From positions 248,001-312,000 of the IMG/VR virus record IMGVR_UViG_3300034072_000926: a stretch of DNA of 64,000 nucleotides; one strand, written 5' to 3'. The translations under genes and the position numbers were made by a program. A model generated the notes under the pieces. The model did not search any database and had not been told where the DNA came from. It worked only from the letters and a program-made list of their open reading frames with translations. Shown one piece after another: positions 6,049-47,002 of the stretch. Every line of letters starts with the position of its first letter. Within the stretch, counting starts at the first letter, position 1.

Positions 6049-6321
6049 TTACAACTTTAAGGGAATCATTCCTGCCCAAGTGATCTTGAACAACATAGCA
6101 TCCTGTGGATCTGCAAACCAAACACCATCGTCGTGCGGATTGACATCTCCTTTGCAATTATCAAGGAGCCATTCTCTGATGTTATCGTCCCAGAACACCG
6201 CAAGCTGATCATCATGCTTTTGTGTCATCTTCCGACGAGGAGGAAGACCAAGATCTTCCCAGAATACCGTTACACTTCGAAGCGTAATGACAATCGGATC
6301 AAAGTCCTCTGACTCACTCAT
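6049..6321 (-). CDS. FKLxW-family small protein
   Basis: 'IREWLLDN...WFADPQDAMLFKITW'. Confidence 0.75.
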   Translation of the reverse strand: MSESEDFDPIVITLRSVTVFWEDLGLPPRRKMTQKHDDQLAVFWDDNIREWLLDNCKGDVNPHDDGVWFADPQDAMLFKITWAGMIPLKL

Positions 6322-6743
6322 CCCCAGGCCAACTTGAACATTGCTGCATCACCCTTACGGCGGAATTTATAGCGGTAGGGATTGATCTTGATGTAGCCGG
6401 CTTTCGAACAACTGGCAACCCATTCAGCAATCTCTTTGCGAATGTCTTCGGGAGACTCGCCTGCAATCTCACGATTCGCTAGTTTCGGAGTGTCGGCGGT
6501 TATCACAGTCCCATAGAAGACAGACCACCAAAGCTTCGGGTTCCGCTGCTTCATGAACATACCGGTCAGAAACAATATAAACGGCATTGCCATAACCCAT
6601 AGGTCAGGAGTCTTCATAGGATTGCCCATGAGCACACCGATACTGATTGGGATATAGAGCCCGGCCGAAACCGCAACAGTGCTCATAAAGAGTGGACCAC
6701 CATCGCTGGCCATGATCCACTCTTTAAAGGACGTCTTAGCCAT
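6318..6743 (-). CDS. Membrane protein with C-terminal FKLxW domain
   Basis: Two hydrophobic segments then 'IAEWV...KFRRKGDAAMFKLAW'. Confidence 0.75.
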   Translation of the reverse strand: MAKTSFKEWIMASDGGPLFMSTVAVSAGLYIPISIGVLMGNPMKTPDLWVMAMPFILFLTGMFMKQRNPKLWWSVFYGTVITADTPKLANREIAGESPEDIRKEIAEWVASCSKAGYIKINPYRYKFRRKGDAAMFKLAWG

Positions 6744-7165
6744 TACCAGCTGGCTTCTACCGTGATCGCGATGATCTCGCCATATTCGGTAGTGACCTTG
6801 CCCTTGAGGCTCTTGCGCTCATCGGCCCAGAAGTCGTTCTCATATTCACGAACTTCGCGATCCGTGCCACAAAGCTTGTTGCCCTCGTCGTCTTCGCTGG
6901 GACGATGAGTGGACAGACGAGTCCAATTCGAGGCTTCGAAGATTGCTGGCCAGAACTTCTGCTGCATTTCGCCGCTCTGTTCCTTGGTCACAATGTTGAA
7001 CTGATTGCGGACCAGTTCAGGCTCGTCCTTGATCTTGTCCATCAGAGCCTGGAGACATTCCGAACTCGTGAACTTCTTGATCTTGCCGTCTTCATCGTCG
7101 CCGAAATAGCCGCCACCGAGGCCAGTAACGCCGATCCCTGCAATTGGATGAATGATATTGCTCAT
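6743..7165 (-). CDS. Hypothetical protein
   Basis: 140-aa ORF translationally coupled on both sides. Confidence 0.75.
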   Translation of the reverse strand: MSNIIHPIAGIGVTGLGGGYFGDDEDGKIKKFTSSECLQALMDKIKDEPELVRNQFNIVTKEQSGEMQQKFWPAIFEASNWTRLSTHRPSEDDEGNKLCGTDREVREYENDFWADERKSLKGKVTTEYGEIIAITVEASW

Positions 7166-7434
7166 ATTTGCCTCCTGTAATCTGGCTTATGGATGCGCTT
7201 CAAATCTCGCACAACATCATCCAGAAGCCCCAAACCCAGTATAACAAGAATCATACCATAAAACAAGAATCCCCAGGTCGGTGCATTGCCCTTAAAGGCA
7301 GACCAAGCAAAGAGAACCCCCTTGCAGCAGAACCCATAAAGTGCAAGGCTTGCGAGGAGAGAAACGAACCCTCTGATCCGTTCCTTCCTTCGCAGCTTTT
7401 TACGCAGTTGGCCTACTGTGAGCATCAGCCCCAC
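7162..7434 (-). CDS. Small membrane protein
   Basis: Basic N-terminus and two hydrophobic helices. Confidence 0.65.
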   Translation of the reverse strand: MGLMLTVGQLRKKLRRKERIRGFVSLLASLALYGFCCKGVLFAWSAFKGNAPTWGFLFYGMILVILGLGLLDDVVRDLKRIHKPDYRRQI

Positions 7435-9416
7435 TTGGCCTTTGCTTCGACAATGCTGATCACATTGTCGCTGCCGATGAGCTGTCGAGCCTTGACCAGC
7501 TTGCTCGAATTGCCAGTGGGGTCCTTGGCCACGAGGTAGGTCGTATCCTTGTTGATCGAGCTGCCGATACGACCGCTACGGGCTTCAATCTTGGCCTCGA
7601 GTTCCTTGTCACGAATGCCGGTGAAGACTACCGTCACGCCATCGAGGTCGCCACCAACAACCTTTTCCTTGGGAGCAACGAGCGTATAATAGCCGTCGAT
7701 GTCGTCGAGGAATGCACGGAAAGCCGGCAAGTTGTCCACGATGGTAGTCGCAATGGTCGTGCCGAAGCCTTCGACCGCGGCGATTTTCTTAGCCAGTTCC
7801 GCGTTGGGAGTATCGACCAGAACCACTTCGTTGCCCAGAGCCTCAATGAGCTTGGTCATCTTCCGGCGCCCGATGCCGCGACCGAGCAAGTTGGACGACC
7901 CGGCGAGGATGCCCAGTTCCACGTTGGCCAGCTTTGCCTTCAGACCTTCATAGATCTTCTTGCCCGCCGAATCACCAACAGCCGCCTTCAGTTCAGCTTC
8001 AGTGGCCTTGATGATCGCCGTCGGATTGGTCAGACCGGCATCGAAGAGCTTCTCGATGCTGCCCTCGCGCAGATGAGCCGTATCCAGTCCACCGCTGCCG
8101 AACATTGCAGCGATGATCTCCAGCTGAACAGCCTTGTTGTTCGAGGTGTCGGTCATAACCAGATCGACCTGACCATCCGTCCATTCCATCGGACCGAATT
8201 CGCTCTCAAGCGGTTCCTGCCAGACCGAAGCCGGTTCGACAACCTTCTGGATGAAGGGGATCACATCGCCGGAGCGCGTGATCTGAATCTTGGCGCCTGG
8301 GCCAATCAGCTTGTCGCGAATGAACTTGGCGTTGAAACCGGTTGCGTAGGTGATCGTTACCCCGACGAGATCGACGGGCTTGATTTCCACACGCGGCTTG
8401 AGATAGCCGGCCTTGCTGGGGTTCCAGTGAACCTTGACCACTTCAGCGATTGCCACGTTGTCGTCGCTGCCGATTTTGAACTTGCGCGAATACATGGGGT
8501 TGATCGACGAACTGTTGCGACGCAGGTTGTCTCGCAAAGTCGCATCATCGAGATCGATTACCAGGCCGTCGATTGCCGTCTTGGTTTCCGCACGACGCTT
8601 TGCCAGCAGAGCGGTCAGGAATTCGTCGGTGAGTTCACGACCATATGCCGTAACATACGGAGTAACTTCGTAGCCTGCCGCTTCCAGTGCCTTGAACTGT
8701 GCCAGCTTGCCCATCTTGGGCGAGACAATCGAGGTCGCGATAACACGAACGTTATCGTAGAAGTCCTTCGGACTCTCGCTTGCGTTCATGCGTCCCGCAA
8801 CATAGTTGCGAGCATTCTTGTAGACGCGACCACCATCGGCTTCGGCCTGTGCCTTCATTGCCGCGAAGGTTTCATCTTCCATGATAACTTCGAGGCGTAC
8901 GTCGTATCCACCGATGTTCATAACATCCAGCGAGCGGGGCATGTTCTTGATGCGCTTCATGTGTCGCGTGATATCCGCGCCCTGGAAGCCATTGCCGCGC
9001 GAATAAGCAATTCGGAGTTCGCCGTCCTTGGCATGACAGTTGAGAGCCGAAGTGCCGTCCTGTTTGTCCGAAATGACGAACAGTTCGTCTTCCCAACCGT
9101 TCGACTGGATCCACTTGATCGTGTCGCCCTCATAGACCTGGTCCAGAGAGCCCATCGGATGGGGAAGGTCGATTTTGCCGCCACGCACATCGGAGCCGAC
9201 TGCCTCGAGGAACTTGTTCTTGGGATCGATGCTCTTCAGCATCTTCTCGAGCTCGTCATATTCGGCATCGCTGATGAACGATTCGCCGTCGCCGTTGTGA
9301 TATTGATCCGACGCCTCGGTCAGAATGTGGACGAGCATATCAGGGGTGGCTTCAATCTCACCGCTGATGATCTGCTGGGATGCTTCGACCGCATCGAAAA
9401 GCTGAACCGTGGTCAT
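7425..9416 (-). CDS. ligA: NAD+-dependent DNA ligase
   Basis: Ia domain 'YHNG..ISDAEYDEL', motif I KQDG, 'SRGNG..G.DIT', IDGLV, OB 'TRSGDVIP', HhH, C-terminal BRCT 'VFTG..INKDTTYLV'; no Cys4 zinc finger. Confidence 0.95.
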   Translation of the reverse strand: MTTVQLFDAVEASQQIISGEIEATPDMLVHILTEASDQYHNGDGESFISDAEYDELEKMLKSIDPKNKFLEAVGSDVRGGKIDLPHPMGSLDQVYEGDTIKWIQSNGWEDELFVISDKQDGTSALNCHAKDGELRIAYSRGNGFQGADITRHMKRIKNMPRSLDVMNIGGYDVRLEVIMEDETFAAMKAQAEADGGRVYKNARNYVAGRMNASESPKDFYDNVRVIATSIVSPKMGKLAQFKALEAAGYEVTPYVTAYGRELTDEFLTALLAKRRAETKTAIDGLVIDLDDATLRDNLRRNSSSINPMYSRKFKIGSDDNVAIAEVVKVHWNPSKAGYLKPRVEIKPVDLVGVTITYATGFNAKFIRDKLIGPGAKIQITRSGDVIPFIQKVVEPASVWQEPLESEFGPMEWTDGQVDLVMTDTSNNKAVQLEIIAAMFGSGGLDTAHLREGSIEKLFDAGLTNPTAIIKATEAELKAAVGDSAGKKIYEGLKAKLANVELGILAGSSNLLGRGIGRRKMTKLIEALGNEVVLVDTPNAELAKKIAAVEGFGTTIATTIVDNLPAFRAFLDDIDGYYTLVAPKEKVVGGDLDGVTVVFTGIRDKELEAKIEARSGRIGSSINKDTTYLVAKDPTGNSSKLVKARQLIGSDNVISIVEAKAKWG

Positions 9417-9460
9417 CTAAACTCCTTGTGTTTCCGATCTATATCACGTGATAACACAGG

Positions 9461-9853: not shown

Positions 9854-9860
9854 TGTTCTC

Positions 9861-28332: not shown

Positions 28333-29178
28333 TCAAGCTTTTCTTTTCGCCCTGATGGCTTCAATGGCTTGACGATCCTCTTCATCAAGCTTTTCAGGAG
28401 TGAATGCAATTTCTACCATCATGTCTCCGCGACGACCATCGCCGAGTGGCATACCTTTACCAGCAGCCCTCAAGGACTGACCGGGATGAATACCCGCCGG
28501 GACGCGCATCTTGATCTTACCGCCCTCAATCGTTGGGATTTCGACTTCGGTTCCCAATAGCGCATCGAGATATCCGATGTTTACATTTGCGACTAGATGG
28601 TGTCCCATACGAGTGAAAGTAGTGTGAGGCATGACGTTGATCTTCACATATAGATCACCGGCTTTCACATTCGACATAGAGTCATCACCCTTGCCTTGGA
28701 ATCTCAGACGAATGCCGTCCTGGATACCTGCTGGGATTTTGATCTTGATGCTCTGCGTTTCCTTGTTGGGAAGATTGTAGGAGATCTCTGCTTCGCGTCC
28801 TGTATAGCTCTCTTCAAGGGTAATCGTGTAGTTGAGCACAATATCACGATTGCGAGCATCTTCAGGATACGGGTTTCTCGAACGACGAATATCTTTGAGG
28901 ATCTCCTCAATGTCAACTTCTGGGCGAGGTTGATTGGACCAATGAAAGTTTGGATTGGGACGAAATCCACCGGTCCTCTGTGCATCATACTGGGAACGCT
29001 TGTTTGCGTCCTTCAACACATCATAGGCTTCGCCGACTTCTTTGAAACGAGCCTCTGCCTCTTTGTTGTTCGGATTGGTATCAGGATGGTTCTCCTTAGC
29101 CAACTTGCGATAGGCAGACTTGATCGCTGCTTCATCAGCCGTGACTGGAACACCGAGGACCTGGTAATAATCTTTCAT
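28333..29178 (-). CDS. dnaJ: DnaJ-class co-chaperone (CbpA-like, no zinc finger)
   Basis: '[19 protein letters not shown]' J-domain, C-terminal 'GDLYVKI'. Confidence 0.92.
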
Positions 29179-29265: not shown

Positions 29266-29604
29266 ATGGACGATCTGTTCGGTAAGGTATTTCAGACCAA
29301 TCGCCAGCGAGTGATGGACATTTTCGACCGTCGTATGCTCAAGCTGGGTGAAGAGTATGGCGAAGCATGTCAGGCCTACCTGAGTGTTTCGAGTGAGAAC
29401 AACAGCAAGAAAAAGTCGTGGGATGATGTCCGTGAGGAACTCGTCGACGTCTTAGTGGTCACCCTTGATCTACTCTGTCACACTATGCCCGATGAAAAGG
29501 ACATGACTGAGGAGGAAAAACTCGCTAGTGTGACTAAGATTCTTAATCGCAAGCTTGATAAGTGGGCGAAGAAAATTAAGAAAAGTGAGGACACAAGCAA
29601 GTGA
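29266..29604 (+). CDS. MazG-like NTP pyrophosphohydrolase
   Basis: 'KLGEEYGE...EELVDVLV'. Confidence 0.7.
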   Translation: MDDLFGKVFQTNRQRVMDIFDRRMLKLGEEYGEACQAYLSVSSENNSKKKSWDDVREELVDVLVVTLDLLCHTMPDEKDMTEEEKLASVTKILNRKLDKWAKKIKKSEDTSK

Positions 29605-29918
29605 AATATGTTCTGGCCCAGAAGCCTGAGAAGCACAATGGAGGAGTGTTCTTCGAGCACGAGATCCATTTCGTTCTTGAAGGCGACGGAGCCCGATTCA
29701 GTTCCACAAGACTGCGCGCACAGGTCGAAGCTTTTATTGCTGAGAACATAGGCGCCAAACACTCTGATTTCAGGGTTTCAGTAAGTCTGCGATGGAATCG
29801 CGAAGCAAAAACTATCAGCAGCTACGGCCAATATCATATGAGCGCAGTTGCTACCGTCAAGGCTAGATTTGTGGACAAGAACAAAGCTTTGCGTTTTAAG
29901 CTGTCCTGGCCTCATTAA
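29601..29918 (+). CDS. FKLxW-family protein
   Basis: 'RFVDKNKALRFKLSW'. Confidence 0.7.
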   Translation: MKYVLAQKPEKHNGGVFFEHEIHFVLEGDGARFSSTRLRAQVEAFIAENIGAKHSDFRVSVSLRWNREAKTISSYGQYHMSAVATVKARFVDKNKALRFKLSWPH

Positions 29919-29958: not shown

Positions 29959-30489
29959 ATGGAATATCGATACCAAGAACCACCCGAAAAACACAACGGC
30001 CAGAAATGGTTCGGCCACGAAATTCACGTGAAGGTTGTTCCTGCACGGAAGACAGAGCTCTTCGAGTTCGTGGAAAAGATCGCCGGCGAAAAAGGCACCG
30101 GTTTTCGGGTTGTCGATATAAATCACAAATGGTCTTTCAAACGAATTGAGGATGTCGTTATACGCTTTGTGGATAAGAACTCCGCATTGCTGTTCAAGTT
30201 GACTTGGGATCCATGTCCCGAACCAGAAGATATCTTTGAACAGTTGAAAAAGATCATGGCACAATTTCCGCCCATCACAAACCATACTGCGATCATGAGT
30301 CGGCGATATCCTACTATTGATCAGTATGCGGACATATATCCAACATCGGTAGATCCTATAGTCTGGTATAAGGATTATAAAGAGCACCAGAAAACCTACT
30401 GGACCAAATCCAGAAGGATTAAAGCTGGTGATACCATCATGGATTTCAGCGAACTAAGAAAGAGGCTAGACGGTGGAACTGAATCGTAA
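29959..30489 (+). CDS. FKLxW-family protein with C-terminal extension
   Basis: 'RFVDKNSALLFKLTW'; N-terminus paralogous to 29601 ORF (QKPEKHNG / EPPEKHNG). Confidence 0.75.
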   Translation: MEYRYQEPPEKHNGQKWFGHEIHVKVVPARKTELFEFVEKIAGEKGTGFRVVDINHKWSFKRIEDVVIRFVDKNSALLFKLTWDPCPEPEDIFEQLKKIMAQFPPITNHTAIMSRRYPTIDQYADIYPTSVDPIVWYKDYKEHQKTYWTKSRRIKAGDTIMDFSELRKRLDGGTES

Positions 30490-31075
30490 TCGTCCTGACC
30501 GGCCGCATCAATCCGGAAAGAAACGTCATTTCAAAGACGGTTTTGATCTCTGGATTAAGAAAGAGCGTATCGGCGAACTGAGGAAGCTTCTAAAGGGTTG
30601 GGACCTCAAAGCTGAGAAAGATTATATCTTCTCAGTAAAGTCCACCTATGATTTTGATAGGATGAAATCCTTCGGCGGAGTAATCTGCATGGAAGCTGTC
30701 ATCTCGTTCAAATCTTCTGACAAGGCCACACTGTTTAAGCTCAGCTGGGCAGAATGTGAACCAACCCGATCTGATAGGGTGCGCTATCTCAACAAGGTCG
30801 TCTTGCCAGTCATCCGAAGGGTGATGCCGAGTATCATCGCGCATGACATCATAGGTGTTCAGCCAATGACAACACCGGCGGCCCAGGTTCACTCTTTGAA
30901 GGTGAAATACGGAACAGGCACCCCGCAACCGCAACCGCCACCGCAATCGCAATCCAAGAGCAAGCTGGAGAAGATGCTAGATGATGCCCGAGAGGAATTG
31001 AAGAAAGCCGCGGGCGCCACGTCATCCTCTCCCAACCACTCTTTCTCTCTTATCCGACCTGACGAAACGGAGTGA
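30473..31075 (+). CDS. FKLxW-family protein fused to a major-capsid-protein (Gol-like) segment
   Basis: 'SFKSSDKATLFKLSW' followed by 'IRRVMPSIIAHDIIGVQPM'. Confidence 0.75.
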   Translation: MELNRNRPDRPHQSGKKRHFKDGFDLWIKKERIGELRKLLKGWDLKAEKDYIFSVKSTYDFDRMKSFGGVICMEAVISFKSSDKATLFKLSWAECEPTRSDRVRYLNKVVLPVIRRVMPSIIAHDIIGVQPMTTPAAQVHSLKVKYGTGTPQPQPPPQSQSKSKLEKMLDDAREELKKAAGATSSSPNHSFSLIRPDETE

Positions 31076-33388: not shown

Positions 33389-33748
33389 ATGGCTCGTCGT
33401 AAAAGAAAAACCTCATATCGTTTCTCACTATCTATGTTCCTCGTAAACAGAACCTCCAAAGTTGATCGCAGGCGTCGTCGTCGCATTCGTCGTTCGAAGA
33501 ATCATTGGCGGACGATTGACAAGCTTACCTACTCAAAGATCCTCATCACGGATATTGAACGGGTATGGCTTGAGCTGAACGCACCCACGGCAACCATTAC
33601 CTATGAACGGGCTCCCAAATATAAGGAGAGCATCGCGTATCGGAAGGGTTATTGGCATGGCTATGTCTATGTCGTGCGTTTTCCTGAATCGATTTCTGAC
33701 AAGGCGATCACATTCAAACATACTTGGTGGAACAAGAAATGCCTGTAA
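33389..33748 (+). CDS. Arg-rich protein, divergent FKLxW family
   Basis: 'VRFPESISDKAITFKHTW'. Confidence 0.65.
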   Translation: MARRKRKTSYRFSLSMFLVNRTSKVDRRRRRRIRRSKNHWRTIDKLTYSKILITDIERVWLELNAPTATITYERAPKYKESIAYRKGYWHGYVYVVRFPESISDKAITFKHTWWNKKCL

Positions 33749-34041
33749 AGCCAATTGCCATCGAATGTGATATAAAGACTTTGTCTCAGGAAGCTCGTGA
33801 TTGGCTGTGGGAAGGCTCGACCGATCTCTGTTGGATTCAATCAGATTATCGGATTGAAGATCGAGAAGTCACTCGAGAAAGTGTTATCACTAATCCTGTG
33901 CCACAACATCTTATGAGTCCACATCTTATAGCTTGGTATTATAGGGCGGATGATACTTCCTTCTGGCTCACGATCAAGCATGATGCGGTGATGTTTGCTA
34001 GTCCCTCTGATGCAACCTATTTCAAGTTGACCTTCCTATGA
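33724..34041 (+). CDS. FKLxW-family protein
   Basis: 'MFASPSDATYFKLTF'. Confidence 0.7.
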   Translation: MVEQEMPVKPIAIECDIKTLSQEARDWLWEGSTDLCWIQSDYRIEDREVTRESVITNPVPQHLMSPHLIAWYYRADDTSFWLTIKHDAVMFASPSDATYFKLTFL

Positions 34042-34340
34042 AGCCCTTATTCTATATGCTCGCCAAGCATGGTCCTTGGTTACATCATGTCAGGATCTCA
34101 AAGTCTGTTAACTTCGTGAGCGCAGTTGAATGGCTAACGAAACAAGGCAAGAAGCAAGATATTGATTACGAAATCTTGATTGAGAAGATCGAGCATCGTA
34201 ATACACAGATCGTTCAACCTGGTAAGACCTCGGGATCGAAGCAATTCACTAATCCAACAGTGAAAGCAATCGAACCAATTCTGTTTTTCAATGACGCAAG
34301 TCTTGCCAGCTATGTGAAGCTTACGTGGGGTGGTCGATGA
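34038..34340 (+). CDS. FKLxW-family protein
   Basis: 'FFNDASLASYVKLTW'. Confidence 0.7.
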   Translation: MKPLFYMLAKHGPWLHHVRISKSVNFVSAVEWLTKQGKKQDIDYEILIEKIEHRNTQIVQPGKTSGSKQFTNPTVKAIEPILFFNDASLASYVKLTWGGR

Positions 34341-34723
34341 GTATCCTGAAAGCCTTTACGCATCCTGATTTTATCAAGGAAGCCAAAGAACTCATCGAGA
34401 GCTATTCTATCCTTGATAATGATGCATTTGACCTTGGATCAGAACTCCAAGCTATCTTGCTTCGACAATATGAATGGGAATTTGAGGACGAGATCAAAGA
34501 CCATCCCTATGGGATAGGAATCCCCAAGTTGGGAACCTATGATTTTGCCCAAGAGGTAGAGCTTGAACTGCTAGAATGGCTTGACAACACCTATCCCAGA
34601 GACGATTACATTTTCATGCCTCTGTCTGCTTATGGCAAATATAAGGATAAGTGGAATTGGATCTATTTCAAGAAAGCATCACAAGCTGTTCATTTCAAAC
34701 TAATCTGGTTTGATTACTTGTAA
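34337..34723 (+). CDS. FKLxW-family protein
   Basis: '[15 protein letters not shown]'; ATGA coupling at 34337. Confidence 0.7.
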
Positions 34724-34932
34724 CGGAAACTGATACGTCCCTTCGAAACATCGTAGGGAGTCATTTCTACCTCTACTCGATCGCCGAGTAGGACATTGAT
34801 ATTGTTCTTACGCATCTTGCCCGAGATATGACCGATAATCACAAAGTCATTCTCGAGCTTGACACGGAACAAAGCATTAGGAAGGACCTCGATGATTTGG
34901 CCCTTCATTTTCATTACGTCTTGCTTTGACAT
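34714..34932 (-). CDS. infA: Translation initiation factor IF-1
   Basis: 72 aa '[43 protein letters not shown]'. Confidence 0.95.
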
Positions 34933-34963
34933 TATTCCTCGCAGATGGGATACCCAGGTATAT

Positions 34964-35368
34964 TTAGCCTGAGACCGTGATCGTCTGCACTTCGATGGTG
35001 TCATCATTCATCATCGGGATAATCCACCACAGATTAGGAATAAGGTTCTCGGGAAGGTCGTAGGTCTCAACGACTTCCACGACTTCATCGGTCATCGTGC
35101 GCAGGTAGGTCATAGCCTCCGTATTGTGACATGAGAAGAAGTGAACCTTGTAGTCTGGACCCTCAAGAGTGATTCGATGATCCCAATCAATGTCCACGCC
35201 GGCTTCTTCGATGAACTCGCGCTTCATAGCATCATAGGCTGTTTCGCCGAATTCAATCTTGCCACCAACAGCGTTATAGAGTCCAGCTTGCCACTCTGGA
35301 CGGTTCTTTTGGATGAGGGTGACACGATCACCCTCATCGCTATAGAGAAGACCTGCGACGTATTCCAT
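34964..35368 (-). CDS. NUDIX hydrolase
   Basis: Nudix box [23 protein letters not shown]. Confidence 0.9.
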
Positions 35369-36009
35369 TACTTCGAGTTGCCTGCACCGAGGATCTTGAT
35401 CTCATCGCAAACGCCGAGGTCTTTAGCTTCCTGAGCCGACAGCCAAACATCATGGGCAGGAAGCAGACGTTCCAAGACCTGTGCCTTGGTCAAGCCAGTG
35501 TGCTTCATGTAGTGGTTCAGCATACGCTCCTGAGTGAGTTCAAATTCACGAACAGTAGCAAACAGTTCGTGCGACTTACCGCGAGAACCCCACGACCATT
35601 CATGCGACAGAATCGAAGTATTGGGAGTGAGAACGCGATGACCCTTTGCACCGGCGATGAAAGTGAGGAAGCCACAGGAGCCAATCATACCCAGGCCCAT
35701 AGTGTGGACGGGGATTGCGCTGCCTTCCATCGCGTCGATGATTGCGAATGCGCTATTGACTTCACCGCCAGGACTGTTGATGATCAGGGTCAGGTGATCA
35801 TACTCCTGACGAGGAGCAAAGTTTGCCTCGAGAATCCAGGTCACAATCTTGTGAGCATTCTCAGAATTGAAACCGCCGCTCAGGAAATAGACGCCCTTGT
35901 CACGCAGGGTGGGAGCAAAATTCGGCGGGGTGGTTGCCATTACAGTAGTTGCCTCGGGCGTTTCCTTCTCGATGACAACACCTTTTTCAGCACCAGTCTT
36001 CTTAACCAT
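35368..36009 (-). CDS. clpP: ClpP serine protease
   Basis: 'INSPGGEV', Ser in GSCG, His in LSHE, Asp in HDVWLSAQEA. Confidence 0.9.
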   Translation of the reverse strand: MVKKTGAEKGVVIEKETPEATTVMATTPPNFAPTLRDKGVYFLSGGFNSENAHKIVTWILEANFAPRQEYDHLTLIINSPGGEVNSAFAIIDAMEGSAIPVHTMGLGMIGSCGFLTFIAGAKGHRVLTPNTSILSHEWSWGSRGKSHELFATVREFELTQERMLNHYMKHTGLTKAQVLERLLPAHDVWLSAQEAKDLGVCDEIKILGAGNSK

Positions 36010-36520: not shown

Positions 36521-36605
36521 GCGCCTGTGGTGAAATTGGTAGACGCGCTGGTTTTAGGTACCAGTATCGAAAGATGTGGGGGTTCGAGTCCCTTCAGGCG
36601 CACCA
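36521..36605 (+). tRNA. tRNA-Leu (anticodon UAG), CCA encoded
   Basis: Acceptor GCGCCTG/CAGGCGC, anticodon loop TT-TAG-GT, long variable arm, GTTCGA, ACCA end. Confidence 0.95.
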
Positions 36606-36648
36606 CCCTTTAAAGCTTTAGATCGGATTACCGTTAGAAGGCTTTAAG

Positions 36649-36792
36649 ATGTCGAGCGATACTATTCTGCACGTTGTCAGCGCGTTTGCATTTGCTGGCA
36701 TGATCTACTGGGGTTGGTCACAGATTCCTCCCGAAGATCCTGAAATCGTTAAGGCCCGCGCCGAACACGGCAAGGTCGATTTGAACGACTAA
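36649..36792 (+). CDS. 47-aa single-TM protein (not in ORF track)
   Basis: MSSDTILHVVSAFAFAGMIYWGWSQIPPED...; TAATG coupling to next ORF. Confidence 0.5.
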   Translation: MSSDTILHVVSAFAFAGMIYWGWSQIPPEDPEIVKARAEHGKVDLND

Positions 36793-36920
36793 TGGACACC
36801 GTCCATAAAGTCTTGTTTGTGGTGTTAATCAGTTTAGGTGTGTTTCTCATCTGGGCAACATATCAATTAATTAAACCCACTACGTTCTATAATATCGATC
36901 CTTCTGAGGACGATATTTAG
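36792..36920 (+). CDS. 42-aa single-TM protein (not in ORF track)
   Basis: [29 protein letters not shown]... Confidence 0.5.
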
Positions 36921-36924
36921 AATT

Positions 36925-36998
36925 GGTCCCGTAGCTCAGCTGGATAGAGCGTCTGCCTCCTAAGCAGAAGGTCACTGGTTCGAATCCAGTCGGGATCA
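36925..36998 (+). tRNA. tRNA-Arg (anticodon CCU), no encoded CCA
   Basis: Acceptor GGTCCCG/CGGGATC, loop CT-CCT-AA, GTTCGAATC. Confidence 0.93.
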
Positions 36999-37006
36999 CA
37001 GATCGA

Positions 37007-37732
37007 ATGAAGATCTTCCCCGAAATCACATTTCATCACTTTCCCAAAGATAGGTCTTTGGTTGAGAAGGTGATTCGTAAATTCTACATTCCGGAATTTG
37101 CAAGGTTTCGTTCCATCGGTGGATATGAGAAATACTGCCGTAGGATGAAGAAGTCCTTTCCTGTCCGTTGGTTTATCAGCGATAGTCTACCCGACTTCTG
37201 GCACTTCAAAGTCAAACAGCCCTACTATAATGTAAGGGCTTGGTATCGTTATCGGTTCACCGAAAAGTATCATATCGTAAAGCTAGACGTCAAACCTGGC
37301 TATATGGATCCTGATGATCGCATCTTGCATGTGAACTTTCAGATCCTCAAAGACTTTGTTGAGATTGAGTTGGGTGCGATGCATGATGCATCAGAAGCCA
37401 AAGACAACGGCAAGATTCTAGGTTCGTTTTCTAAACTTTACCGAAAGTATAAGAAGAAGAACATTCGCAACCCGGAGGGCGGTGTTCAGTATTTGGATTG
37501 GGAGATTGCTGAGTCAGGTTCTTCCCATCAGGCACACGCGGCTGCTGAGAAGAAGGCAATTTACCTGTGGTGGACTGAAGAACGCCCTAATCGTCTTGAC
37601 GTCTATGATAATCCATACATGGATAATGAAACCAACTACAGGGCTATGAATCGTCTCGAGAGTTTCTATTACGAACAAGACCAAGAAATGCTAAAGCGTT
37701 TGATTGATATCAGAAGTAGCATTTGGATGTAA
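37007..37732 (+). CDS. Hypothetical protein
   Basis: 241-aa ORF between tRNAs. Confidence 0.75.
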
Positions 37733-37762
37733 AAAGATATTGCAATGCAGATTATCCATGTG

Positions 37763-37770
37763 TATAAATA
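37763..37770 (+). promoter_or_regulatory. T4-type late promoter upstream of tRNA-Pro
   Basis: Perfect TATAAATA 32 nt before the tRNA. Confidence 0.55.
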
Positions 37771-37801
37771 AACACATAGAGCAGCACATTGCTTTATACC
37801 T

Positions 37802-37875
37802 CGGGGAGTAGCGCAGTCTGGTAGCGCGCTTGCTTTGGGAGCAAGATGTCGCAGGTTCGAATCCTGTCTCCCCGA
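37802..37875 (+). tRNA. tRNA-Pro (anticodon UGG), no encoded CCA
   Basis: Acceptor CGGGGAG/CTCCCCG, loop TT-TGG-GA, GTTCGAATC. Confidence 0.95.
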
Positions 37876-37964
37876 CATAGTTGAAGTGGTCCCACTGACG
37901 CAAGTCATGCACCCTCAACCCTCCTAGGCCAGTTGGTCGGATTAGTCCCACCCATTGAGCTGGA

Positions 37965-38029: not shown

Positions 38030-38305
38030 ATGTCTTTTGTTTACAAGCCATATAGAAGGGATTCATCCCTCGACAGTAAGCCTTTCGTTAGGATCGAACT
38101 CCTTGTTGATGTCGTCGAATTTGAGGGTCTTGTAAACTGGCTTCACCAGAGAAATTCTAGAGCCTTCCTCAATGGATGGACTACTGACCAATGGCTAAGA
38201 AGTTTCAATCTCTATATACCAGATAGCGGCGTTATAATCTCTCTTGAGAGAGAATTTGCCAAAACCTTGGTTCTTCGTTTTCCATCAGTGGTCTTGACAA
38301 ATTGA
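38030..38305 (+). CDS. Hypothetical protein
   Basis: 91-aa ORF after promoter. Confidence 0.6.
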   Translation: MSFVYKPYRRDSSLDSKPFVRIELLVDVVEFEGLVNWLHQRNSRAFLNGWTTDQWLRSFNLYIPDSGVIISLEREFAKTLVLRFPSVVLTN

Positions 38306-38327: not shown

Positions 38328-38615
38328 ATGGATTATGAAGTCGTCTATACAGATCATGTGATGCATCTCACAGACGAAGAGACTGATCGTTTCTTCGATG
38401 CCTTTGATAAGTCAGATGACGACTTGCCTTTCTATCTCCACAACGCCCGTCACCGCTTCATAAAGCAAGATCTGTATGACTGGCTGGAGAACAATGTTGG
38501 CCAAGCTGGTTATGATTGGACACATATCAAGGGATTGACCCGAGATTGTCGTTCAATCAAGTTCAGACAACAAAGTCACGCAATGCTGTTTAAGCTGACG
38601 TTTGGAGGGAAATAA
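38328..38615 (+). CDS. FKLxW-family protein
   Basis: 'LYDWLENN...KFRQQSHAMLFKLTF'. Confidence 0.75.
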   Translation: MDYEVVYTDHVMHLTDEETDRFFDAFDKSDDDLPFYLHNARHRFIKQDLYDWLENNVGQAGYDWTHIKGLTRDCRSIKFRQQSHAMLFKLTFGGK

Positions 38616-39291: not shown

Positions 39292-40031
39292 TATACAATC
39301 CTAAACAGTGCAACTTCGTGGAGGGCATTCGCGACCAGCAAGTGTTCTCCACGCTGTTCAACTAGCCAGAAGTCACCCAACATCCTCTGAACCCTACGAC
39401 AGTTTGCATTCGCGGTTTCATCGAGACGGGTTGCGGACATCATAGCTGCGTTATTCTCATAAACAACATCGTAGCTACCATGATCAACAAACTCAAGCTC
39501 TACGGATACTCCACGAGCTTCCATAGTAGCAATCTTTCCCTCTACGACAAGATTGTCTAGATCACTTGCACGGAAGAATTCCGTGAGGTCTTCTGCGATC
39601 TCGTCTTCGTGACCTTTATGGTCTTCGAGGGATTCTAGACGAACATCCTGCTGAAGAGTCTCGAGAGTTACTGGCTGAACAACGCCAGTTTCATAGAATG
39701 TGCCTTTCCAGCTTTTAATGCCCGTCAGACCATTCAAACTATCAAGCATTGCCACGACCTTCTTGGGAAGGTCAGCATCCCTGAGAAGTTCTACAAATAC
39801 GAGATAATACCCTTCCTCATTAGGAGCGGGGCTCACATCAGTATCTAGAATTGGAGTAGCGCCCTTCTGGATGAAACGGTTCAAGTCTTGAGCTGGTTCT
39901 CGGTCAATGACGAAGAATGCGATAACAATCGAGTCGTCATCCAACTTGCTGTCATATTCATCAATAGAGATGAGAGGGAAGACTAGTTCTTCCAAGTCGC
40001 CTTCTTTGAGACCTTCAAAGAGATTTTCCAT
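39291..40031 (-). CDS. Conserved jumbo-phage hypothetical protein
   Basis: 'ISIDEYDSK...LDTDVSP..EGYYLVFVE'. Confidence 0.75.
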   Translation of the reverse strand: MENLFEGLKEGDLEELVFPLISIDEYDSKLDDDSIVIAFFVIDREPAQDLNRFIQKGATPILDTDVSPAPNEEGYYLVFVELLRDADLPKKVVAMLDSLNGLTGIKSWKGTFYETGVVQPVTLETLQQDVRLESLEDHKGHEDEIAEDLTEFFRASDLDNLVVEGKIATMEARGVSVELEFVDHGSYDVVYENNAAMMSATRLDETANANCRRVQRMLGDFWLVEQRGEHLLVANALHEVALFRIV

Positions 40032-40582
40032 TATAGACCTCCAGTCTCAGATTCGTCTTCCTCTGCGTCTGGTTCGGCATCACCAGCATCATCAGTGAAA
40101 GCATCAGTCTCATCAACGTCTTCGTCACGAGCGTCCGAGACATTCTCAATGTCAACAGCTTCGTCATCAACGTGCATTTCAAGATCAGAGTCATCAAGTT
40201 CTTCGATAAAGCGACGCGGGATCTGAACATCAACTAGCCAGATCTCTTCCTGCTTCATCTTCGGTTTGTTATTAGGCTGAAGGTCGCTAGGAGTTTCAAT
40301 CTCAACTGCGACTTCTTCCTTGGCCTTACGGAAGACAACCTTTGCGCCATGCTGTAGGAGACGTTCAGCACCGGCGGGATCAGGCATCTGCTTGTAGGCA
40401 TATTTGAGAGTCATCGATACCCAGTAACGACGAATATTTGGACCTTCAACAATCTCACCATCAATCCAGTTCTTGAACACATATAGGTCAAGCGAGTCCA
40501 GAAAGTCTTCCATCTGTATCAAGACGTCCGTAAGGCTGTCTGAGTCACTTAGACGCTTATAAAGATTAGGATTTGCTGGCAT
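40031..40582 (-). CDS. Conserved jumbo-phage hypothetical protein
   Basis: 'LDSLDLYVFKNW..GEIVEGP..MPDP.GAERLL', acidic tail; TAAATA at 40605. Confidence 0.75.
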   Translation of the reverse strand: MPANPNLYKRLSDSDSLTDVLIQMEDFLDSLDLYVFKNWIDGEIVEGPNIRRYWVSMTLKYAYKQMPDPAGAERLLQHGAKVVFRKAKEEVAVEIETPSDLQPNNKPKMKQEEIWLVDVQIPRRFIEELDDSDLEMHVDDEAVDIENVSDARDEDVDETDAFTDDAGDAEPDAEEDESETGGL

Positions 40583-40663: not shown

Positions 40664-41128
40664 ATGCGTCTTTGGGAACTATTCAGCGACCTTAATGAAC
40701 GAAACCTGAAAGATATTGAACGCGATCTAGATTCGCAGGTCTATCAACCAGCAGAAAAGGTTTCGCAAGGTAAGCCTGTCATCGACCTCGATCTACTAAG
40801 CAGTCCACATTTTATTCAGCGAGTAAACCAGCGCGCAGGTAATGCTGGTGTCTCTCCTGAGGAGGTGGAAGATCTCTTCCGTGCAGGTCGTGAAAAGTTT
40901 AAGGTCGAAATTGGCCAGGCTTCCCGCAAAGATAATTTCCAGGACACTGGTTCACACATCGATTTCTATGATCCAAAGACCAAGCTGATGGTTCCTACTA
41001 TCGTTCAGCCAAATCCGAATTGCAAGCCAAATAGCCGTGGTAAGGTTGTATGTCAGACACCTAATGGCACTGAACCAAAGAACAGGCTAGTTGCAAAGAC
41101 AATGTTTCGTAAGGGTGTCGACGATTAA
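40664..41128 (+). CDS. Hypothetical protein with capsid-targeting-like N-terminus
   Basis: MRLWELFS..; 'HFIQRVN', 'LVAKTMFRK'; TAAATA at 40629. Confidence 0.7.
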   Translation: MRLWELFSDLNERNLKDIERDLDSQVYQPAEKVSQGKPVIDLDLLSSPHFIQRVNQRAGNAGVSPEEVEDLFRAGREKFKVEIGQASRKDNFQDTGSHIDFYDPKTKLMVPTIVQPNPNCKPNSRGKVVCQTPNGTEPKNRLVAKTMFRKGVDD

Positions 41129-43257: not shown

Positions 43258-43279
43258 TGGGCCACTAAATAGCGGCCCA
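43258..43279 (-). terminator. Terminator-like hairpin
   Basis: TGGGCCGCT-ATTT-AGTGGCCCA on minus strand. Confidence 0.5.
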
Positions 43280-43285
43280 CCCTAC

Positions 43286-44201: not shown

Positions 44202-44586
44202 CGGTGACCTCAGGAGCAGCTTCCTTCTTCGTGGAGAAGCGGTCGATGAATACCTGAACCTTCTTGAGGTTCATAGGATCCTTCTGAATCCAAGTAGTCA
44301 GCGCAGCCTTGACATCATCGAAGTGACGAGACACAAACATATTGATCAGCTTCTCATGTTCCAGTTCTTGATCCCGGCACATTACAACCTTGTTTTCAAA
44401 CAAGTCGATAATCAGTTCGGCAGCTCGCATCTGCTTGTTCGAGACACGATCAACGATGACCATGTTCTCAATGGGTTCCCACTGAGCAGTTTCGCCAAAT
44501 CCCTTGACCTGGCTCTTCTGACCAGCAGCCAAGACGTAGGTGTAGCTGATGATCATGAATGGACGATTGCGTAGATAGTTAGACAT
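44191..44586 (-). CDS. Hypothetical protein
   Basis: 131 aa, coupled operon. Confidence 0.7.
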   Translation of the reverse strand: MSNYLRNRPFMIISYTYVLAAGQKSQVKGFGETAQWEPIENMVIVDRVSNKQMRAAELIIDLFENKVVMCRDQELEHEKLINMFVSRHFDDVKAALTTWIQKDPMNLKKVQVFIDRFSTKKEAAPEVTDGE

Positions 44587-45085
44587 TCTTTACCTCAAAA
44601 ATTTCGTAGGGGAGTTCAACCCATTCTACGCCTGCTTCCTCGAAGCGCCTCTTGCTCTCCGAGAGGATTGGTGCCCAACGGTCAGCCTTATCAGGCGGAC
44701 AAGTAGGGGCGACTACTCGTGTAATACCGGCCTGGATCATATGGACCGCGCAGCGATCACAAGACAAAAAGGGCCATGTGTAAAGGGTGTTACCACGCAC
44801 ATTATCATGTGCGCTTAACACCGCGTTCATTTCACAATGCACGATGAAGCTGTATTTGACCTCACGATCCTCATAGCGTTCAGGGGTGTCCTCAATACCA
44901 CGAGGGAAGCCATTATAGCCGATGCTCGCTACCGAATTGTCAGGTCGAACAATGACAGCACCAGTCTGAGTGCTAGGATCTTTGGACCAGCTCGCAACTA
45001 GGCGAGCTAGTTCAACATAACGGATATCCCACTTGACCTTGCTATTTTGAGCGTCTAGGACTTTCTGGATATCTACATCAATCAT
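44579..45085 (-). CDS. dCMP deaminase
   Basis: 'SKDPSTQTGAVIV', 'GYNGFP', HCEMN, 'CDRC..IQAGI'. Confidence 0.92.
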   Translation of the reverse strand: MIDVDIQKVLDAQNSKVKWDIRYVELARLVASWSKDPSTQTGAVIVRPDNSVASIGYNGFPRGIEDTPERYEDREVKYSFIVHCEMNAVLSAHDNVRGNTLYTWPFLSCDRCAVHMIQAGITRVVAPTCPPDKADRWAPILSESKRRFEEAGVEWVELPYEIFEVKNV

Positions 45086-46020
45086 AGTTGACTCAGTTCC
45101 ACAAGAGTGGCAGCCAAGTTGATTTCAGCATCGGCCGAGATAGCGTGATTGCGAAGACCAGCAGCGATGATGATAATTGCCTGACTCTGAGTTACTTCAT
45201 CAGCGCCGAAGAGATGCAGGTTCTTATACATGAAGCGGAAGATATCTTCGTAGTCGTTAATGTCAGCCTTGCTGACAATCAGCTTACGAGCTTCAGTGAA
45301 GTGACGAGCCTTAAACAGTTCAACAGCTTCTTCCATATAGTTGAGGCTAGTTGCGCTGGCTTCCTTCAGAGGAGAAAGAACACCACCAGTAGTGTGCTGG
45401 TCAAGCAGGTTGATGCACTTGCGAAGATCAGGATAGGTGTTTGTGACATAGAGCTCAAGGTCATTTATGTCGTAGGTCACATTTTCCATAGTCAGGATCT
45501 CAAGCGCACGACCGAAGAAGCCTTCCATGTCCAGTGCGTCGAAGTGAATACCTTGCATCCTCGAGTGCAATGCGCCCATGATCTTATGAGGCAGGTTGCA
45601 GGTAATGATGAAGCGAACGCTATCGGCGAACTTCTCCATTTCGTTACGGAGGATTGCCTGTGCGTTCTGAGACAGGTAGTCGCCTTCGTCGATTAGAACG
45701 ACCTTGTAGTCGCCATTCGGGAAGGTAGAACAGAAGCCGAGAACCTTATCCTTCAGAATATCAACGCCGTTTTCACGCGAACCGTTGAGCTCAAGGATGT
45801 CATACTTGTTCACGCCAAGCTCGTTGAGCATCAACTTCGCAAGCGTGGTCTTGCCCACCCCTGGCGATCCGCTGAGGAGCAAGTGAGGGAAAGGAATGAT
45901 TTTACCCTCAGGGTTCTTAACCCAGTTTTCAATTTGTGCGCGGATGTGATCATTCTTGAACACATATCCGTCCAGCGTATTAGGGCGATACCGCTCAACC
46001 CAAAGATCTGGTGTGGCCAT
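45082..46020 (-). CDS. Clamp loader AAA+ subunit (RFC small/gp44-like)
   Basis: 'WVERYRP', GSPGVGKT, 'LIDEGD', SRC-like 'LHSRM', 'PDLRKCIN'. Confidence 0.92.
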   Translation of the reverse strand: MATPDLWVERYRPNTLDGYVFKNDHIRAQIENWVKNPEGKIIPFPHLLLSGSPGVGKTTLAKLMLNELGVNKYDILELNGSRENGVDILKDKVLGFCSTFPNGDYKVVLIDEGDYLSQNAQAILRNEMEKFADSVRFIITCNLPHKIMGALHSRMQGIHFDALDMEGFFGRALEILTMENVTYDINDLELYVTNTYPDLRKCINLLDQHTTGGVLSPLKEASATSLNYMEEAVELFKARHFTEARKLIVSKADINDYEDIFRFMYKNLHLFGADEVTQSQAIIIIAAGLRNHAISADAEINLAATLVELSQL

Positions 46021-46100
46021 GTTTGGCTTCTCCTTAATTTGTATCGCTACAATAGGTGAAAACAGGCCAAAACGTCAATTTATCTTTGAGCTAAATGGAA

Positions 46101-46134
46101 GCCCGCACAAGCCCTCATGGGAGCCTATGCGGGC
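46101..46134 (-). terminator. Terminator hairpin
   Basis: 14-bp stem with three G-U pairs on minus strand, followed by TTCCATTT. Confidence 0.65.
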
Positions 46135-46190
46135 GCATTAGTGTTTGATTAAACTGGGCTTTTATAGACAGCCGCAGGGTATCTCAGATG

Positions 46191-46466
46191 TTATTCGCCA
46201 CCCCAGGATAGTTTGAACAACATTGCATCTTTCTTATTCTTAAAATAGAAAGCTAGACCGCCATAGCCTGCCCACTGACCGGCTGCGAAACGACCGTGGA
46301 TCATTTCGCCCTCGCACCATTCAATGGCCTCATTCACGCGAACGCGATAAGCCTTGGTATCAGTATATCCATACTGATCTTCATTGAAGTCAGAGGCCTT
46401 CAAAGGCATAAAGATACTATGCCACCGATTAACCATCAACGGATTGAATTCTCTCTTGATTCCCAT
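46191..46466 (-). CDS. FKLxW-family protein
   Basis: 'AIEWCE...YFKNKKDAMLFKLSW'. Confidence 0.75.
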   Translation of the reverse strand: MGIKREFNPLMVNRWHSIFMPLKASDFNEDQYGYTDTKAYRVRVNEAIEWCEGEMIHGRFAAGQWAGYGGLAFYFKNKKDAMLFKLSWGGE

Positions 46467-46776
46467 CTGACCAACGAAGCCTGTAAGCTTCTTCTCCCTG
46501 TTCAGTCTTAAATTCCAATTGCAAGCGATACGCTCTTGGATGGTCTTCTGTCAAGTTATCCAGATAAGTGTAGGAAACTCGAAAGGCTATCTTTGATTCC
46601 TTTAACCAAGTCATACGCTCATTCACTAATGTGTGGAACCTTTCATCCTCCCAGATGAAATTATGAAGGTCATGCCAACTACAAGGTGTGAACACTTGAT
46701 AGACAGCGCATGGATAGAGATATCTAGTGATCAACCCGCGTTCTCGGGTATCAACCTCTATTGCATCGATTTTCAT
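46429..46776 (-). CDS. Divergent FKLxW-family protein
   Basis: 'EFKTEQGEEAYRLRW'. Confidence 0.6.
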   Translation of the reverse strand: MKIDAIEVDTRERGLITRYLYPCAVYQVFTPCSWHDLHNFIWEDERFHTLVNERMTWLKESKIAFRVSYTYLDNLTEDHPRAYRLQLEFKTEQGEEAYRLRWSDGNQERIQSVDG

Positions 46777-46780
46777 TGGA

Positions 46781-47002
46781 TTATCCGTGGCTCAACTTAA
46801 ACAGGAGCGCATCAATCCTATTATGGAATGAGACAGTTAGGGTGCTGCAATCATCACAGTCTAGTCCGCGATGATACCATTCATAGGATTTGATCTTAGG
46901 TCTATTGAATGCAACAAAGTCATTCAGAGACTCAAAGTGGTTGTGATCACGAACAATCACAACCACTTCGGGTGGATTAGAGTGGGCATTCATCCTGAAC
47001 AC
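46781..47002 (-). CDS. FKLxW-family protein
   Basis: 'SFHNRIDALLFKLSH'. Confidence 0.65.
   Translation of the reverse strand: MFRMNAHSNPPEVVVIVRDHNHFESLNDFVAFNRPKIKSYEWYHRGLDCDDCSTLTVSFHNRIDALLFKLSHG

What the first reader, a model, noticed from the sequence alone, without database searches (positions are those of the whole stretch)
6049..47002. Dispersed 13-member paralog family ending in F-x4-A-x2-FKL-x-W
Seen: ORFs 6049, 6318, 29601, 29959, 30473, 33389, 33724, 34038, 34337, 38328, 46191, 46429 and 46781 share a terminal motif (e.g. FADPQDAMLFKITW, FRRKGDAAMFKLAW, FVDKNSALLFKLTW, FASPSDATYFKLTF, FRQQSHAMLFKLTF, FKNKKDAMLFKLSW). Most also have an upstream 'EWL..N' helix. They occur in five clusters on both strands with very variable middles and different fusions (TM helices, capsid segment, Arg-rich tract). 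Inference: a small scaffold expanded and diversified as a library of host-interaction adaptors, such as anti-defence proteins or substrate adaptors for the phage ClpAP.
Basis: partly seen in the sequence, partly recalled or inferred. Interest (0 to 1): 0.66.

Follow-up and report, generated by a model that had tools for sequence, protein, structure and literature searches.

The report
Huge unnamed small-protein family in jumbo phage
A 465-kb T4-like jumbo phage devotes about one gene in eight (about 95 genes, 11 to 12 of them in this window) to fast-diverging copies of one unnamed 60-residue domain whose function is unknown and which is found almost only in phages.

Summary
Eleven of the 13 listed ORFs are significant members of one family (HMM E 5e-14 to 9e-6). 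ORF 46429 is a probable divergent member. ORF 33389 is not supported.

Genome-wide, the 465,259-bp phage record carries about 95 members. That is about 13% of its genes and 6.6% of its DNA, mostly in tight, co-oriented, overlapping arrays; a 35-gene array starts 472 bp after the window ends. Sinorhizobium phage Phosso has 57 copies. Three other 417-462 kb uncultured jumbo phages have 84-95 matches each. PA5oct has 3, and T4 has none. A library-wide profile search finds 1,831 clusters.

No Pfam, PHROG, NCBIfam, PDB-sequence or literature match exists. The AlphaFold model (pLDDT 78) is a beta-alpha-beta-beta-alpha sandwich that resembles only generic ferredoxin/ACT-like folds. The six near-invariant residues are five hydrophobic or small positions plus one lysine. 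Loops, N-terminal parts, length and charge all vary.

Paralogs are only about 34% identical to their closest in-genome copy. A 97%-identical relative nevertheless shows purifying selection.

A diversified binder library aimed at host proteins is the best reading, but it is inferred and not shown. The ClpAP-adaptor idea has no robust support. Some members are conserved fusions to fragments of the major capsid protein.

The parts
6049..6321 (-). Family member, 90 aa; domain at aa 46-84, 8-residue tail
   Evidence: HMM E 9.7e-12; strict motif FADPQDAMLFKITW
6318..6743 (-). Family member, 141 aa; N-terminal TM-like stretch (aa 18-40) plus C-terminal domain
   Evidence: HMM E 5.3e-8; hydropathy scan
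29601..29918 (+). Family member, 105 aa
   Evidence: HMM E 3.8e-6; its best paralog is the adjacent gene 29959
29959..30489 (+). Family member, 176 aa; domain at aa 45-83 followed by a 93-aa extension with no family match
   Evidence: HMM E 1.1e-7; no Pfam hit
30473..31075 (+). Conserved fusion: family domain (aa 59-92) plus a copy of the Gol-region segment of the major capsid protein (aa 93-147)
   Evidence: HMM E 8.8e-6; Pfam Gp23 E 1.6e-13; 60% identical to own MCP aa 59-113; 44% identical to T4 gp23 aa 85-132; orthologues in G002 and G003
33389..33748 (+).
   Evidence: HMM E 8.1; hhalign probability 12%, only 24 C-terminal columns aligned
33724..34041 (+). Family member, 105 aa
   Evidence: HMM E 1.7e-6
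34038..34340 (+). Family member, 100 aa (VKLTW variant of the motif)
   Evidence: HMM E 2.2e-7
34325..34723 (+). Family member, 132 aa
   Evidence: HMM E 6.4e-7
38328..38615 (+). Family member, 95 aa; closest paralog lies at genome 464347-464637
   Evidence: HMM E 5e-14; 39.5% identity, 62 bits to that paralog
46191..46466 (-). Family member, 91 aa; the protein that was modelled
   Evidence: HMM E 7.7e-15; AF2 pLDDT 77.8; in the 97%-identical relative it has 9 synonymous changes, and its amino-acid changes all lie at residues 13-31
46429..46776 (-). Probable divergent member, 115 aa (motif FKTEQGEEAYRLRW)
   Evidence: HMM E 0.87; hhalign P 2e-4 over 53 columns; 6 synonymous and 0 non-synonymous changes outside the overlap with the next gene
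46781..47002 (-). Family member, 73 aa (FKLSH variant of the motif)
   Evidence: HMM E 6.8e-6; the close relative carries an in-frame 9-bp insertion

Best explanation
The ORFs are copies of one uncharacterised domain of about 60 residues, found almost only in phages.

Fold: strand, helix 1 carrying a near-invariant Trp ('E-x2-WL-x-EN'), beta hairpin, then a C-terminal helix 'D-A-M-L-F-K-L-T-W', often followed by G-G.

Scale: the domain has been amplified to about 95 genes in this T4-like, Phosso/Atu_ph07-clade jumbo phage, and to comparable numbers in its relatives. The copies lie in tightly packed, co-oriented, translationally coupled arrays in the accessory regions between core genes.

Pattern of variation: five of the six near-invariant residues are hydrophobic or small and probably form the fold's core. 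The sixth is a lysine whose role is open. The N-terminal part, the loops, the overall length and the net charge differ from copy to copy.

Proposed function: the domain serves as a stable mini-scaffold that displays variable surfaces. It would be a library of non-virion accessory proteins, each binding a different, mainly host, protein for takeover or counter-defence. This would resemble the arrays of immunity proteins in bacteria and the multigene families of large eukaryotic viruses.

Shown: family membership, copy number, array organisation, fold class, deep divergence with purifying selection, near-restriction to phages, and portability in fusions.

Inferred: that the copies bind proteins, that the targets are host proteins, and when the genes are expressed.
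For: Family and scale: 95 ORFs in the genome, and 0 hits on reversed ORFs. Copy numbers elsewhere are 57 in Phosso and 84, 95 and 91 matches in three other 417-462 kb IMG/VR genomes. Two metagenomic contigs carry 38 members in 20 kb and 26 in 8.3 kb. The library-wide profile search finds 1,831 50%-identity clusters.

Fold and conservation: AF2 pLDDT 77.8, beta-alpha-beta-beta-alpha. Only W39, A70, F73, K74, L75 and W77 are conserved in at least 90% of sequences.

Variation: 33 members are acidic and 38 basic. A 55-sequence alignment of proteins of about 70-115 aa spreads over 299 columns because of indels.

Divergence: the median best in-genome match is 34% identity and 32 bits. Only about 4 members have a Phosso counterpart above 70 bits, although the capsid protein is 88.5% identical and the clamp loader 55%.

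Selection: a 96.8%-identical contig shows 15 synonymous against about 7 non-synonymous changes and one in-frame indel. In ORF 46191 every amino-acid change lies at residues 13-31, outside the conserved domain.

Arrays: 39 of 49 consecutive same-strand pairs overlap or lie within 10 nt.

Distribution: Atlas and BFVD neighbours are viral and unnamed. The three PA5oct homologues carry no virion mass-spectrometry flag, although neighbouring genes do.

Portability: fusions exist to a TM segment, to capsid fragments in either order, and to a second copy of the domain.
Against: There is no direct evidence for any binding partner, host target or defence system.

No recent duplicates exist (best paralog pair 62 bits, 40% identity). 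This is therefore not an ongoing 'accordion' amplification of the kind expected in an active arms race.

The near-invariant Lys in FKL and the very strong conservation of the whole C-terminal helix could instead mark a shared functional site used by all copies. The capsid-fragment fusions point towards capsid or translation biology rather than defence.
Confidence: 0.4

Rival explanations
1. Capsid- or assembly-associated proteins. The domain would be delivered to, or act on, the major capsid protein (MCP) or its folding and translation machinery, for example as internal or decoration proteins, or as modulators of MCP, EF-Tu or the chaperonin.
For: A family domain fused to the MCP Gol-region segment is conserved in three genomes: the window ORF 30473-31075, and ORFs in G002 and G003. 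A different, C-terminal MCP segment is fused to a family domain in G000 and in Phosso, in opposite orders. In one neighbouring Atlas cluster 13% of members carry the Gp23 Pfam family. Three members lie directly downstream of the GroES-like gene at 46977-47321.
Against: Only 2 of about 95 copies in this genome carry MCP pieces. The members share no N-terminal targeting or protease-cleavage motif. The PA5oct homologues are not among the virion proteins flagged by mass spectrometry. The arrays lie among replication and auxiliary genes, not in the structural modules.
Confidence: 0.12
2. Nucleic-acid- or small-ligand-binding regulators that use a ferredoxin, ACT or RRM-like fold, for example RNA-binding or translational modulators, with the conserved Lys and Trp forming a common binding site.
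For: The best structural neighbours are ACT, RRM, EF-G-domain and MzrA-type two-layer sandwiches (Z 5.3-7.0). K74 and W77 are near-invariant. The phage invests heavily in translation: an IF-1 gene at 34714-35007 and tRNA genes. One fusion partner corresponds to the EF-Tu-binding region of T4 gp23.
Against: Z values of 7 or less are within the background for this search. Net charge ranges from strongly acidic to strongly basic. About 95 paralogous regulators in one phage would have no precedent.
Confidence: 0.1
3. Substrate adaptors for the phage-encoded Clp protease.
For: The genome encodes two ClpP-like genes, a ClpA-like gene and a ClpX-like gene. The member at genome 229245-229559 abuts clpP. 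Two of PA5oct's three members lie just downstream of its clpP.
Against: The Phosso and Atu_ph07 counterparts of that member are not next to clpP. With 21 clusters in the genome, chance adjacency to any given gene is likely. No similarity to ClpS, SspB or other adaptors was found. No direct test of a family member against ClpP was made.
Confidence: 0.05
4. Largely dispensable or selfish cargo: old duplicated cassettes that persist in the roomy genome of a headful-packaging jumbo phage and have no specific function.
For: The divergence is extreme, few orthologues are shared between related phages, and copy number varies from 57 to 95.
Against: The reading frames are intact. Close relatives show a synonymous excess and an in-frame indel. 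The fold-determining residues are conserved across 1,831 clusters. Syntenic orthologues are conserved near the RNA ligase and MoxR/vWA genes in three phages.
Confidence: 0.05

Closest known systems
Lineage-specific expansion of a zinc ribbon in Bacillus phage G (about 35 copies; Iyer et al. 2021, PMC7824862)
   Same: One small domain is amplified to dozens of copies in a jumbo phage genome. Its function is also only guessed at.
   Different: The fold is different (an alpha/beta sandwich, no metal ligands). The copy number is about three times higher. The expansion is shared by at least five genomes and by thousands of metagenomic clusters, rather than being confined to one phage.
Tandem arrays of polymorphic-toxin immunity proteins in bacteria, and multigene families of large eukaryotic DNA viruses (from general knowledge, not tested here)
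   Same: These are tandem arrays of small, fast-diverging paralogs with a conserved fold core and variable surfaces, thought to match variable targets.
   Different: There is no sequence or significant fold link to any such family. No cognate toxin or target is known. The copies here are old (about 34% identity), not recent duplicates.
ACT, ferredoxin-like, MzrA and MESD-type two-layer alpha/beta sandwiches
   Same: The secondary-structure order beta-alpha-beta-beta-alpha is shared, with three strands backed by two helices. Best matches are 3ofg (Z 7.0), 4pwu (Z 6.2) and 5v0s (Z 5.9).
   Different: The fourth strand of the ferredoxin fold is missing. Sequence identity is 7-20%. The Z values are at background level. 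Foldseek against the PDB gave no hit at E 0.001 or better.
Uncharacterised proteins of Agrobacterium phage Atu_ph07, Burkholderia phage BcepSauron, Pseudomonas phage PA5oct and uncultured Caudovirales
   Same: For Atu_ph07 and PA5oct the link rests on profile hits and so on homology: PA5oct EST35_0247, 0274 and 0275 (E down to 4.7e-7) and four weak Atu_ph07 hits. For BcepSauron and the uncultured Caudovirales it rests only on weak BFVD fold matches (Foldseek E about 0.015-0.09).
   Different: Cultured relatives outside the Phosso group have only a few copies. All of these proteins are annotated as hypothetical.

Membership tests
Any Pfam-A, PHROG or NCBIfam family | A significant profile HMM match | tested here: not met
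   The 13 window ORFs had no relevant hit. Of the 142 aligned members, Pfam and NCBIfam gave only scattered single chance hits and PHROGs gave none.
Any protein with a solved structure | Sequence-profile match to a PDB chain, or a fold match above background | tested here: not met
   Best hmmsearch E against PDB sequences was 0.46. Foldseek against the PDB gave no hit at E 0.001 or better. The best VIA-align Z was 7.0, within the stated background of 7-8.
ACT / ferredoxin-like fold | A beta-alpha-beta-beta-alpha-beta unit with a four-stranded antiparallel sheet | tested here: inconclusive
   The model has beta-alpha-beta-beta-alpha and ends after helix 2 with no fourth strand. ACT domains align at Z 5.9 over 60-64 residues.
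T4 Gp23 major capsid protein (PF07068), for ORF 30473-31075 only | A full HK97-type capsid fold covering the 376-position profile | tested here: not met
   Only profile positions 4-49 are present. The true capsid gene lies at genome 160571-161794. The ORF carries a fragment and is not a capsid protein.
Clp adaptors (ClpS / SspB type) | Sequence or fold similarity to a known adaptor, and conserved linkage to clp genes | tested here: not met
   No adaptor appears among the sequence or fold hits. Adjacency to clpP is not conserved in Phosso or Atu_ph07.
Known anti-defence proteins | Homology to a characterised anti-defence protein, or experimental inhibition of a defence system | not testable with these tools
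   None of the libraries searched gave a named hit. No dedicated anti-defence library was available, and the PADLOC defence library was not searched. Function requires bench tests.

The most novel reading that the evidence does not exclude
The domain is a previously unrecognised general-purpose 'display scaffold' of giant T4-like phages. About 85-95 versions per genome each neutralise or redirect a different host protein. A conserved subset is fused to mimics of the two most conserved capsid-protein peptides, including the region that in T4 binds EF-Tu and triggers the Lit abortive-infection protease. Those fusions would intercept host factors or immune sensors that recognise the capsid protein.
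Probability: 0.15. Interest if true: 0.9.

Novelty: new variant of a known kind. Interest (0 to 1): 0.7.

Why it matters
About one gene in eight of a whole clade of jumbo phages of roughly 420-470 kb belongs to a single family that no database names and that none of the papers searched describes. This accounts for a visible share of the 'unique ORFs' reported for such phages; the AP-J-162 paper, for example, reports 304 unique ORFs (PMC11242549).

The family also gives a concrete handle on why these genomes are so large. If the copies are binders of host proteins, the family is a ready-made natural library for finding host targets and counter-defence mechanisms in rhizobia and other bacteria. 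A 60-residue scaffold that tolerates this much variation is of interest in its own right.

The conserved fusions to capsid-protein peptides offer a specific, testable entry point, through EF-Tu, the chaperonin or capsid-sensing immunity.

Tried and rejected
- Near-identity and single-sequence searches of GenBank phages found nothing for the family. It is too divergent and needs profiles.
A degenerate DNA pattern of the motif was used instead.
- The sigma-70 promoter and terminator scan showed no enrichment.
- The T4 late-promoter motif TATAAATA is not enriched: 7 sites in the genome.
- De novo 8-mer enrichment in upstream regions gave only a candidate GGTAAATA motif, upstream of 8 non-family genes. 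Expression timing therefore remains open.
- The per-gene expression tables of the PA5oct paper are not held.
- Complex prediction on two copies of the domain gave no verdict (score 0.01). This is not evidence for or against dimerisation.
- Pfam and PHROG scans of the longer fusion proteins (603, 336, 211, 197 aa and others) and Pfam scans of ten two-domain metagenomic members found no partner domain.
- The context in a Rhizobium prophage and a Novosphingobium contig was uninformative: unknown ORFs, an Ig/GDSL tail-fibre-like protein and a DEAD-box helicase.
- ORF 38030-38305, which has a WL-type helix, was tested and rejected as a member.
Full report
**What the window is.** The window is bases 248,001-312,000 of a single 465,259-bp IMG/VR virus record (49% GC, CheckV 100% complete). 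It is a T4-like jumbo phage. Its clamp loader is 55% identical to that of Sinorhizobium phage Phosso (469 kb), 47% to Agrobacterium phage Atu_ph07 and 46% to Pseudomonas phage PA5oct. Its major capsid protein is 88.5% identical to Phosso's.

**Check of the observation.** All 13 ORFs exist at the stated coordinates.
- The strict C-terminal motif occurs in 9 of 300 window ORFs. Shuffled ORFs give a mean of 0.06.
- An HMM built iteratively from the genome's own ORFs scores 11 of the 13 at E 5e-14 to 9e-6 and gives no hit on reversed ORFs.
- ORF 46429 is a probable divergent member. hhalign gives P 2e-4 over both helices, and in a 97%-identical relative the ORF ends 2 residues after the motif.
- ORF 33389 is not supported.

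**Scale.** The genome holds about 95, in 21 clusters. That is about 13% of roughly 712 genes and 6.6% of the DNA. A 35-gene array starts 472 bp beyond the window's end. Within arrays, 39 of 49 consecutive same-strand pairs overlap or lie within 10 nt of each other.

Copy numbers in other genomes, using the profile:

| Genome | Size | Copies or matches |
|---|---|---|
| This genome (G000) | 465 kb | about 95 ORFs |
| Phosso | 469 kb | 57 ORFs |
| IMG/VR G001 | 436 kb | 84 matches |
| IMG/VR G002 | 417 kb | 95 matches |
| IMG/VR G003 | 462 kb | 91 matches |
| PA5oct | 287 kb | 3 |
| Atu_ph07 | 490 kb | 4, weak |
| Provirus G004 | 35.7 kb | 1 |
| T4, SCTP-2, CBB, XbC2, Vibrio phage 2.275.O | 169-440 kb | 0 |

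- Two bacterial genomes, a Rhizobium and a Novosphingobium, carry two copies each; the Rhizobium pair lies in a prophage.
- Two metagenomic contigs carry 38 members in 20 kb and 26 in 8.3 kb.
- A profile search of 1.84 billion representative proteins finds 1,831 clusters at E 0.001 or better. The 150 best-scoring are 61-246 aa long. All 24 that were read carry the same motif, and some carry two domains in tandem.

**What the domain is.**
- No Pfam, PHROG, NCBIfam or PDB-sequence match exists for the window members or for 142 aligned members.
- Source databases give no informative name.
- The motif does not occur in the paper library. The papers on AP-J-162 and on jumbo-phage comparative genomics do not describe the family.
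- With a 142-sequence alignment, AlphaFold gives pLDDT 77.8 and the order strand, helix, hairpin, helix.
- Structural neighbours are generic two-layer sandwiches (BMY-1/MESD, MzrA, ACT, EF-G domains, RRM) at Z 7.0 or less, which is the stated background level. Foldseek against the PDB gives no hit at E 0.001 or better.
- BFVD and Atlas neighbours are unnamed viral proteins.
- Only W39, A70, F73, K74, L75 and W77 are near-invariant. Apart from the Lys, these are what a small hydrophobic core would need. That reading is inference, because the model coordinates could not be inspected.

**Evolution.**
- Paralogs are old. The median best in-genome match is 34% identity and 32 bits, and the maximum is 62 bits.
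- Only about 4 members have a Phosso counterpart above 70 bits.
- Adjacent genes are each other's best match 8 times, against 2.0 expected. This is a faint trace of tandem duplication.
- A 990-bp metagenomic contig 96.8% identical to window 46057-47037 shows 15 synonymous against about 7 non-synonymous changes and an in-frame 9-bp insertion. In ORF 46191 the amino-acid changes all lie at residues 13-31, outside the conserved domain. The genes are therefore real and under purifying selection.
- Net charge is spread widely: 33 members have pI below 6 and 38 have pI above 8.5.

**Interpretation.** The data fit a stable mini-scaffold with variable surfaces, kept as a large library of accessory proteins. 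The arrays sit between core genes in syntenic but variably filled slots. For example, three copies lie between the GroES-like gene and the clamp loader here, and five hits lie there in Phosso. The PA5oct homologues carry no virion mass-spectrometry flag.

Binding to diverse host proteins, for takeover or counter-defence, is the most economical reading, but it is inferred. The ClpAP-adaptor idea rests on adjacencies that are not conserved. The capsid- or translation-linked rival and the ligand- or RNA-binding rival cannot be excluded.

**A lead found on the way.** ORF 30473-31075 joins the family domain to a 55-residue copy of the capsid protein's most conserved N-proximal segment. That copy is 60% identical to the phage's own capsid protein and 44% identical to T4 gp23 residues 85-132.
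- A review describes the Gol region as a 29-residue stretch in the first quarter of gp23 that binds EF-Tu, triggers the Lit protease and is the most conserved part of the protein (PMC3014915). From memory, not checked here, Gol spans about residues 93-122, which lies inside the aligned stretch.
- The same fusion is conserved in two other jumbo genomes.
- A second, C-terminal capsid segment is fused to a family domain in this genome and in Phosso, in opposite orders.

This shows that the domain is a portable module, and it gives a specific hypothesis to test.

**Verdict.** The family is real, very large and unnamed, and its function is unknown. The general 'diversified scaffold' reading is reasonable. 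The specific functions proposed are untested.

Noticed in passing
window 30473-31075; L100 685-1206 (G003); L101 722-1198 (G002); Phosso 182175-182855: A conserved fusion gene joins the family domain to a copy of about 50 aa of the capsid protein's most conserved N-proximal segment, which aligns to T4 gp23 aa 85-132 (the Gol / EF-Tu-binding region). The Phosso ORF has the fragment but no detectable family domain.
   Followed up: partly
genome 317636-318028 (L045 1252-1641); Phosso 113923-114303: A second capsid-protein piece, the C-terminal 'AFYxPYxPL' segment (MCP aa about 335-377), is fused to a family domain. The domain comes first in this genome and the fragment comes first in Phosso, which suggests independent fusions.
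   Followed up: partly
family arrays genome-wide, e.g. window 33724-34723 and L001: Many members end TGG-GGN-GGN-NNA-TGA. The W-G-G tail may therefore double as a G-rich Shine-Dalgarno-like tract, with an ATGA stop/start overlap for the next gene. This could partly explain why the terminal GG is conserved. The second Gly codon is GGA in 9 of 24 cases, against 17% genome-wide.
   Followed up: partly
genome-wide upstream regions, e.g. window 40031-40582 (-) and 40664-41128 (+): GGTAAATA lies 22-34 nt upstream of the start codon of six non-family genes (8 carry the motif in all) and upstream of none of the 17 family genes that have an upstream gap. It is a candidate late-promoter motif replacing T4's TATAAATA.
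   Followed up: no
window 28333-29178, 34714-35007, 34964-35368, 35398-35904, 46977-47321, 7425-9416, 36521-37876: The window also encodes host-like auxiliary genes: a DnaJ-like protein, translation initiation factor IF-1, a NUDIX-like protein, a second ClpP-like protein, a GroES-like co-chaperonin, an NAD-dependent-type DNA ligase, and tRNA-Leu, tRNA-Arg and tRNA-Pro. A ClpA-like ATPase lies at about 25.4 kb. Most were identified by eye from the translations.
   Followed up: no
L056 4566-5245 (Rhizobium sp. 2MFCol3.1 = L086); L057 2034-3295 (Novosphingobium guangzhouense); L077 7280-7585: One or two family copies also occur in proviruses of about 35 kb and in bacterial genomes of Alphaproteobacteria. 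The domain is therefore not confined to jumbo phages; only the massive expansion is.
   Followed up: partly
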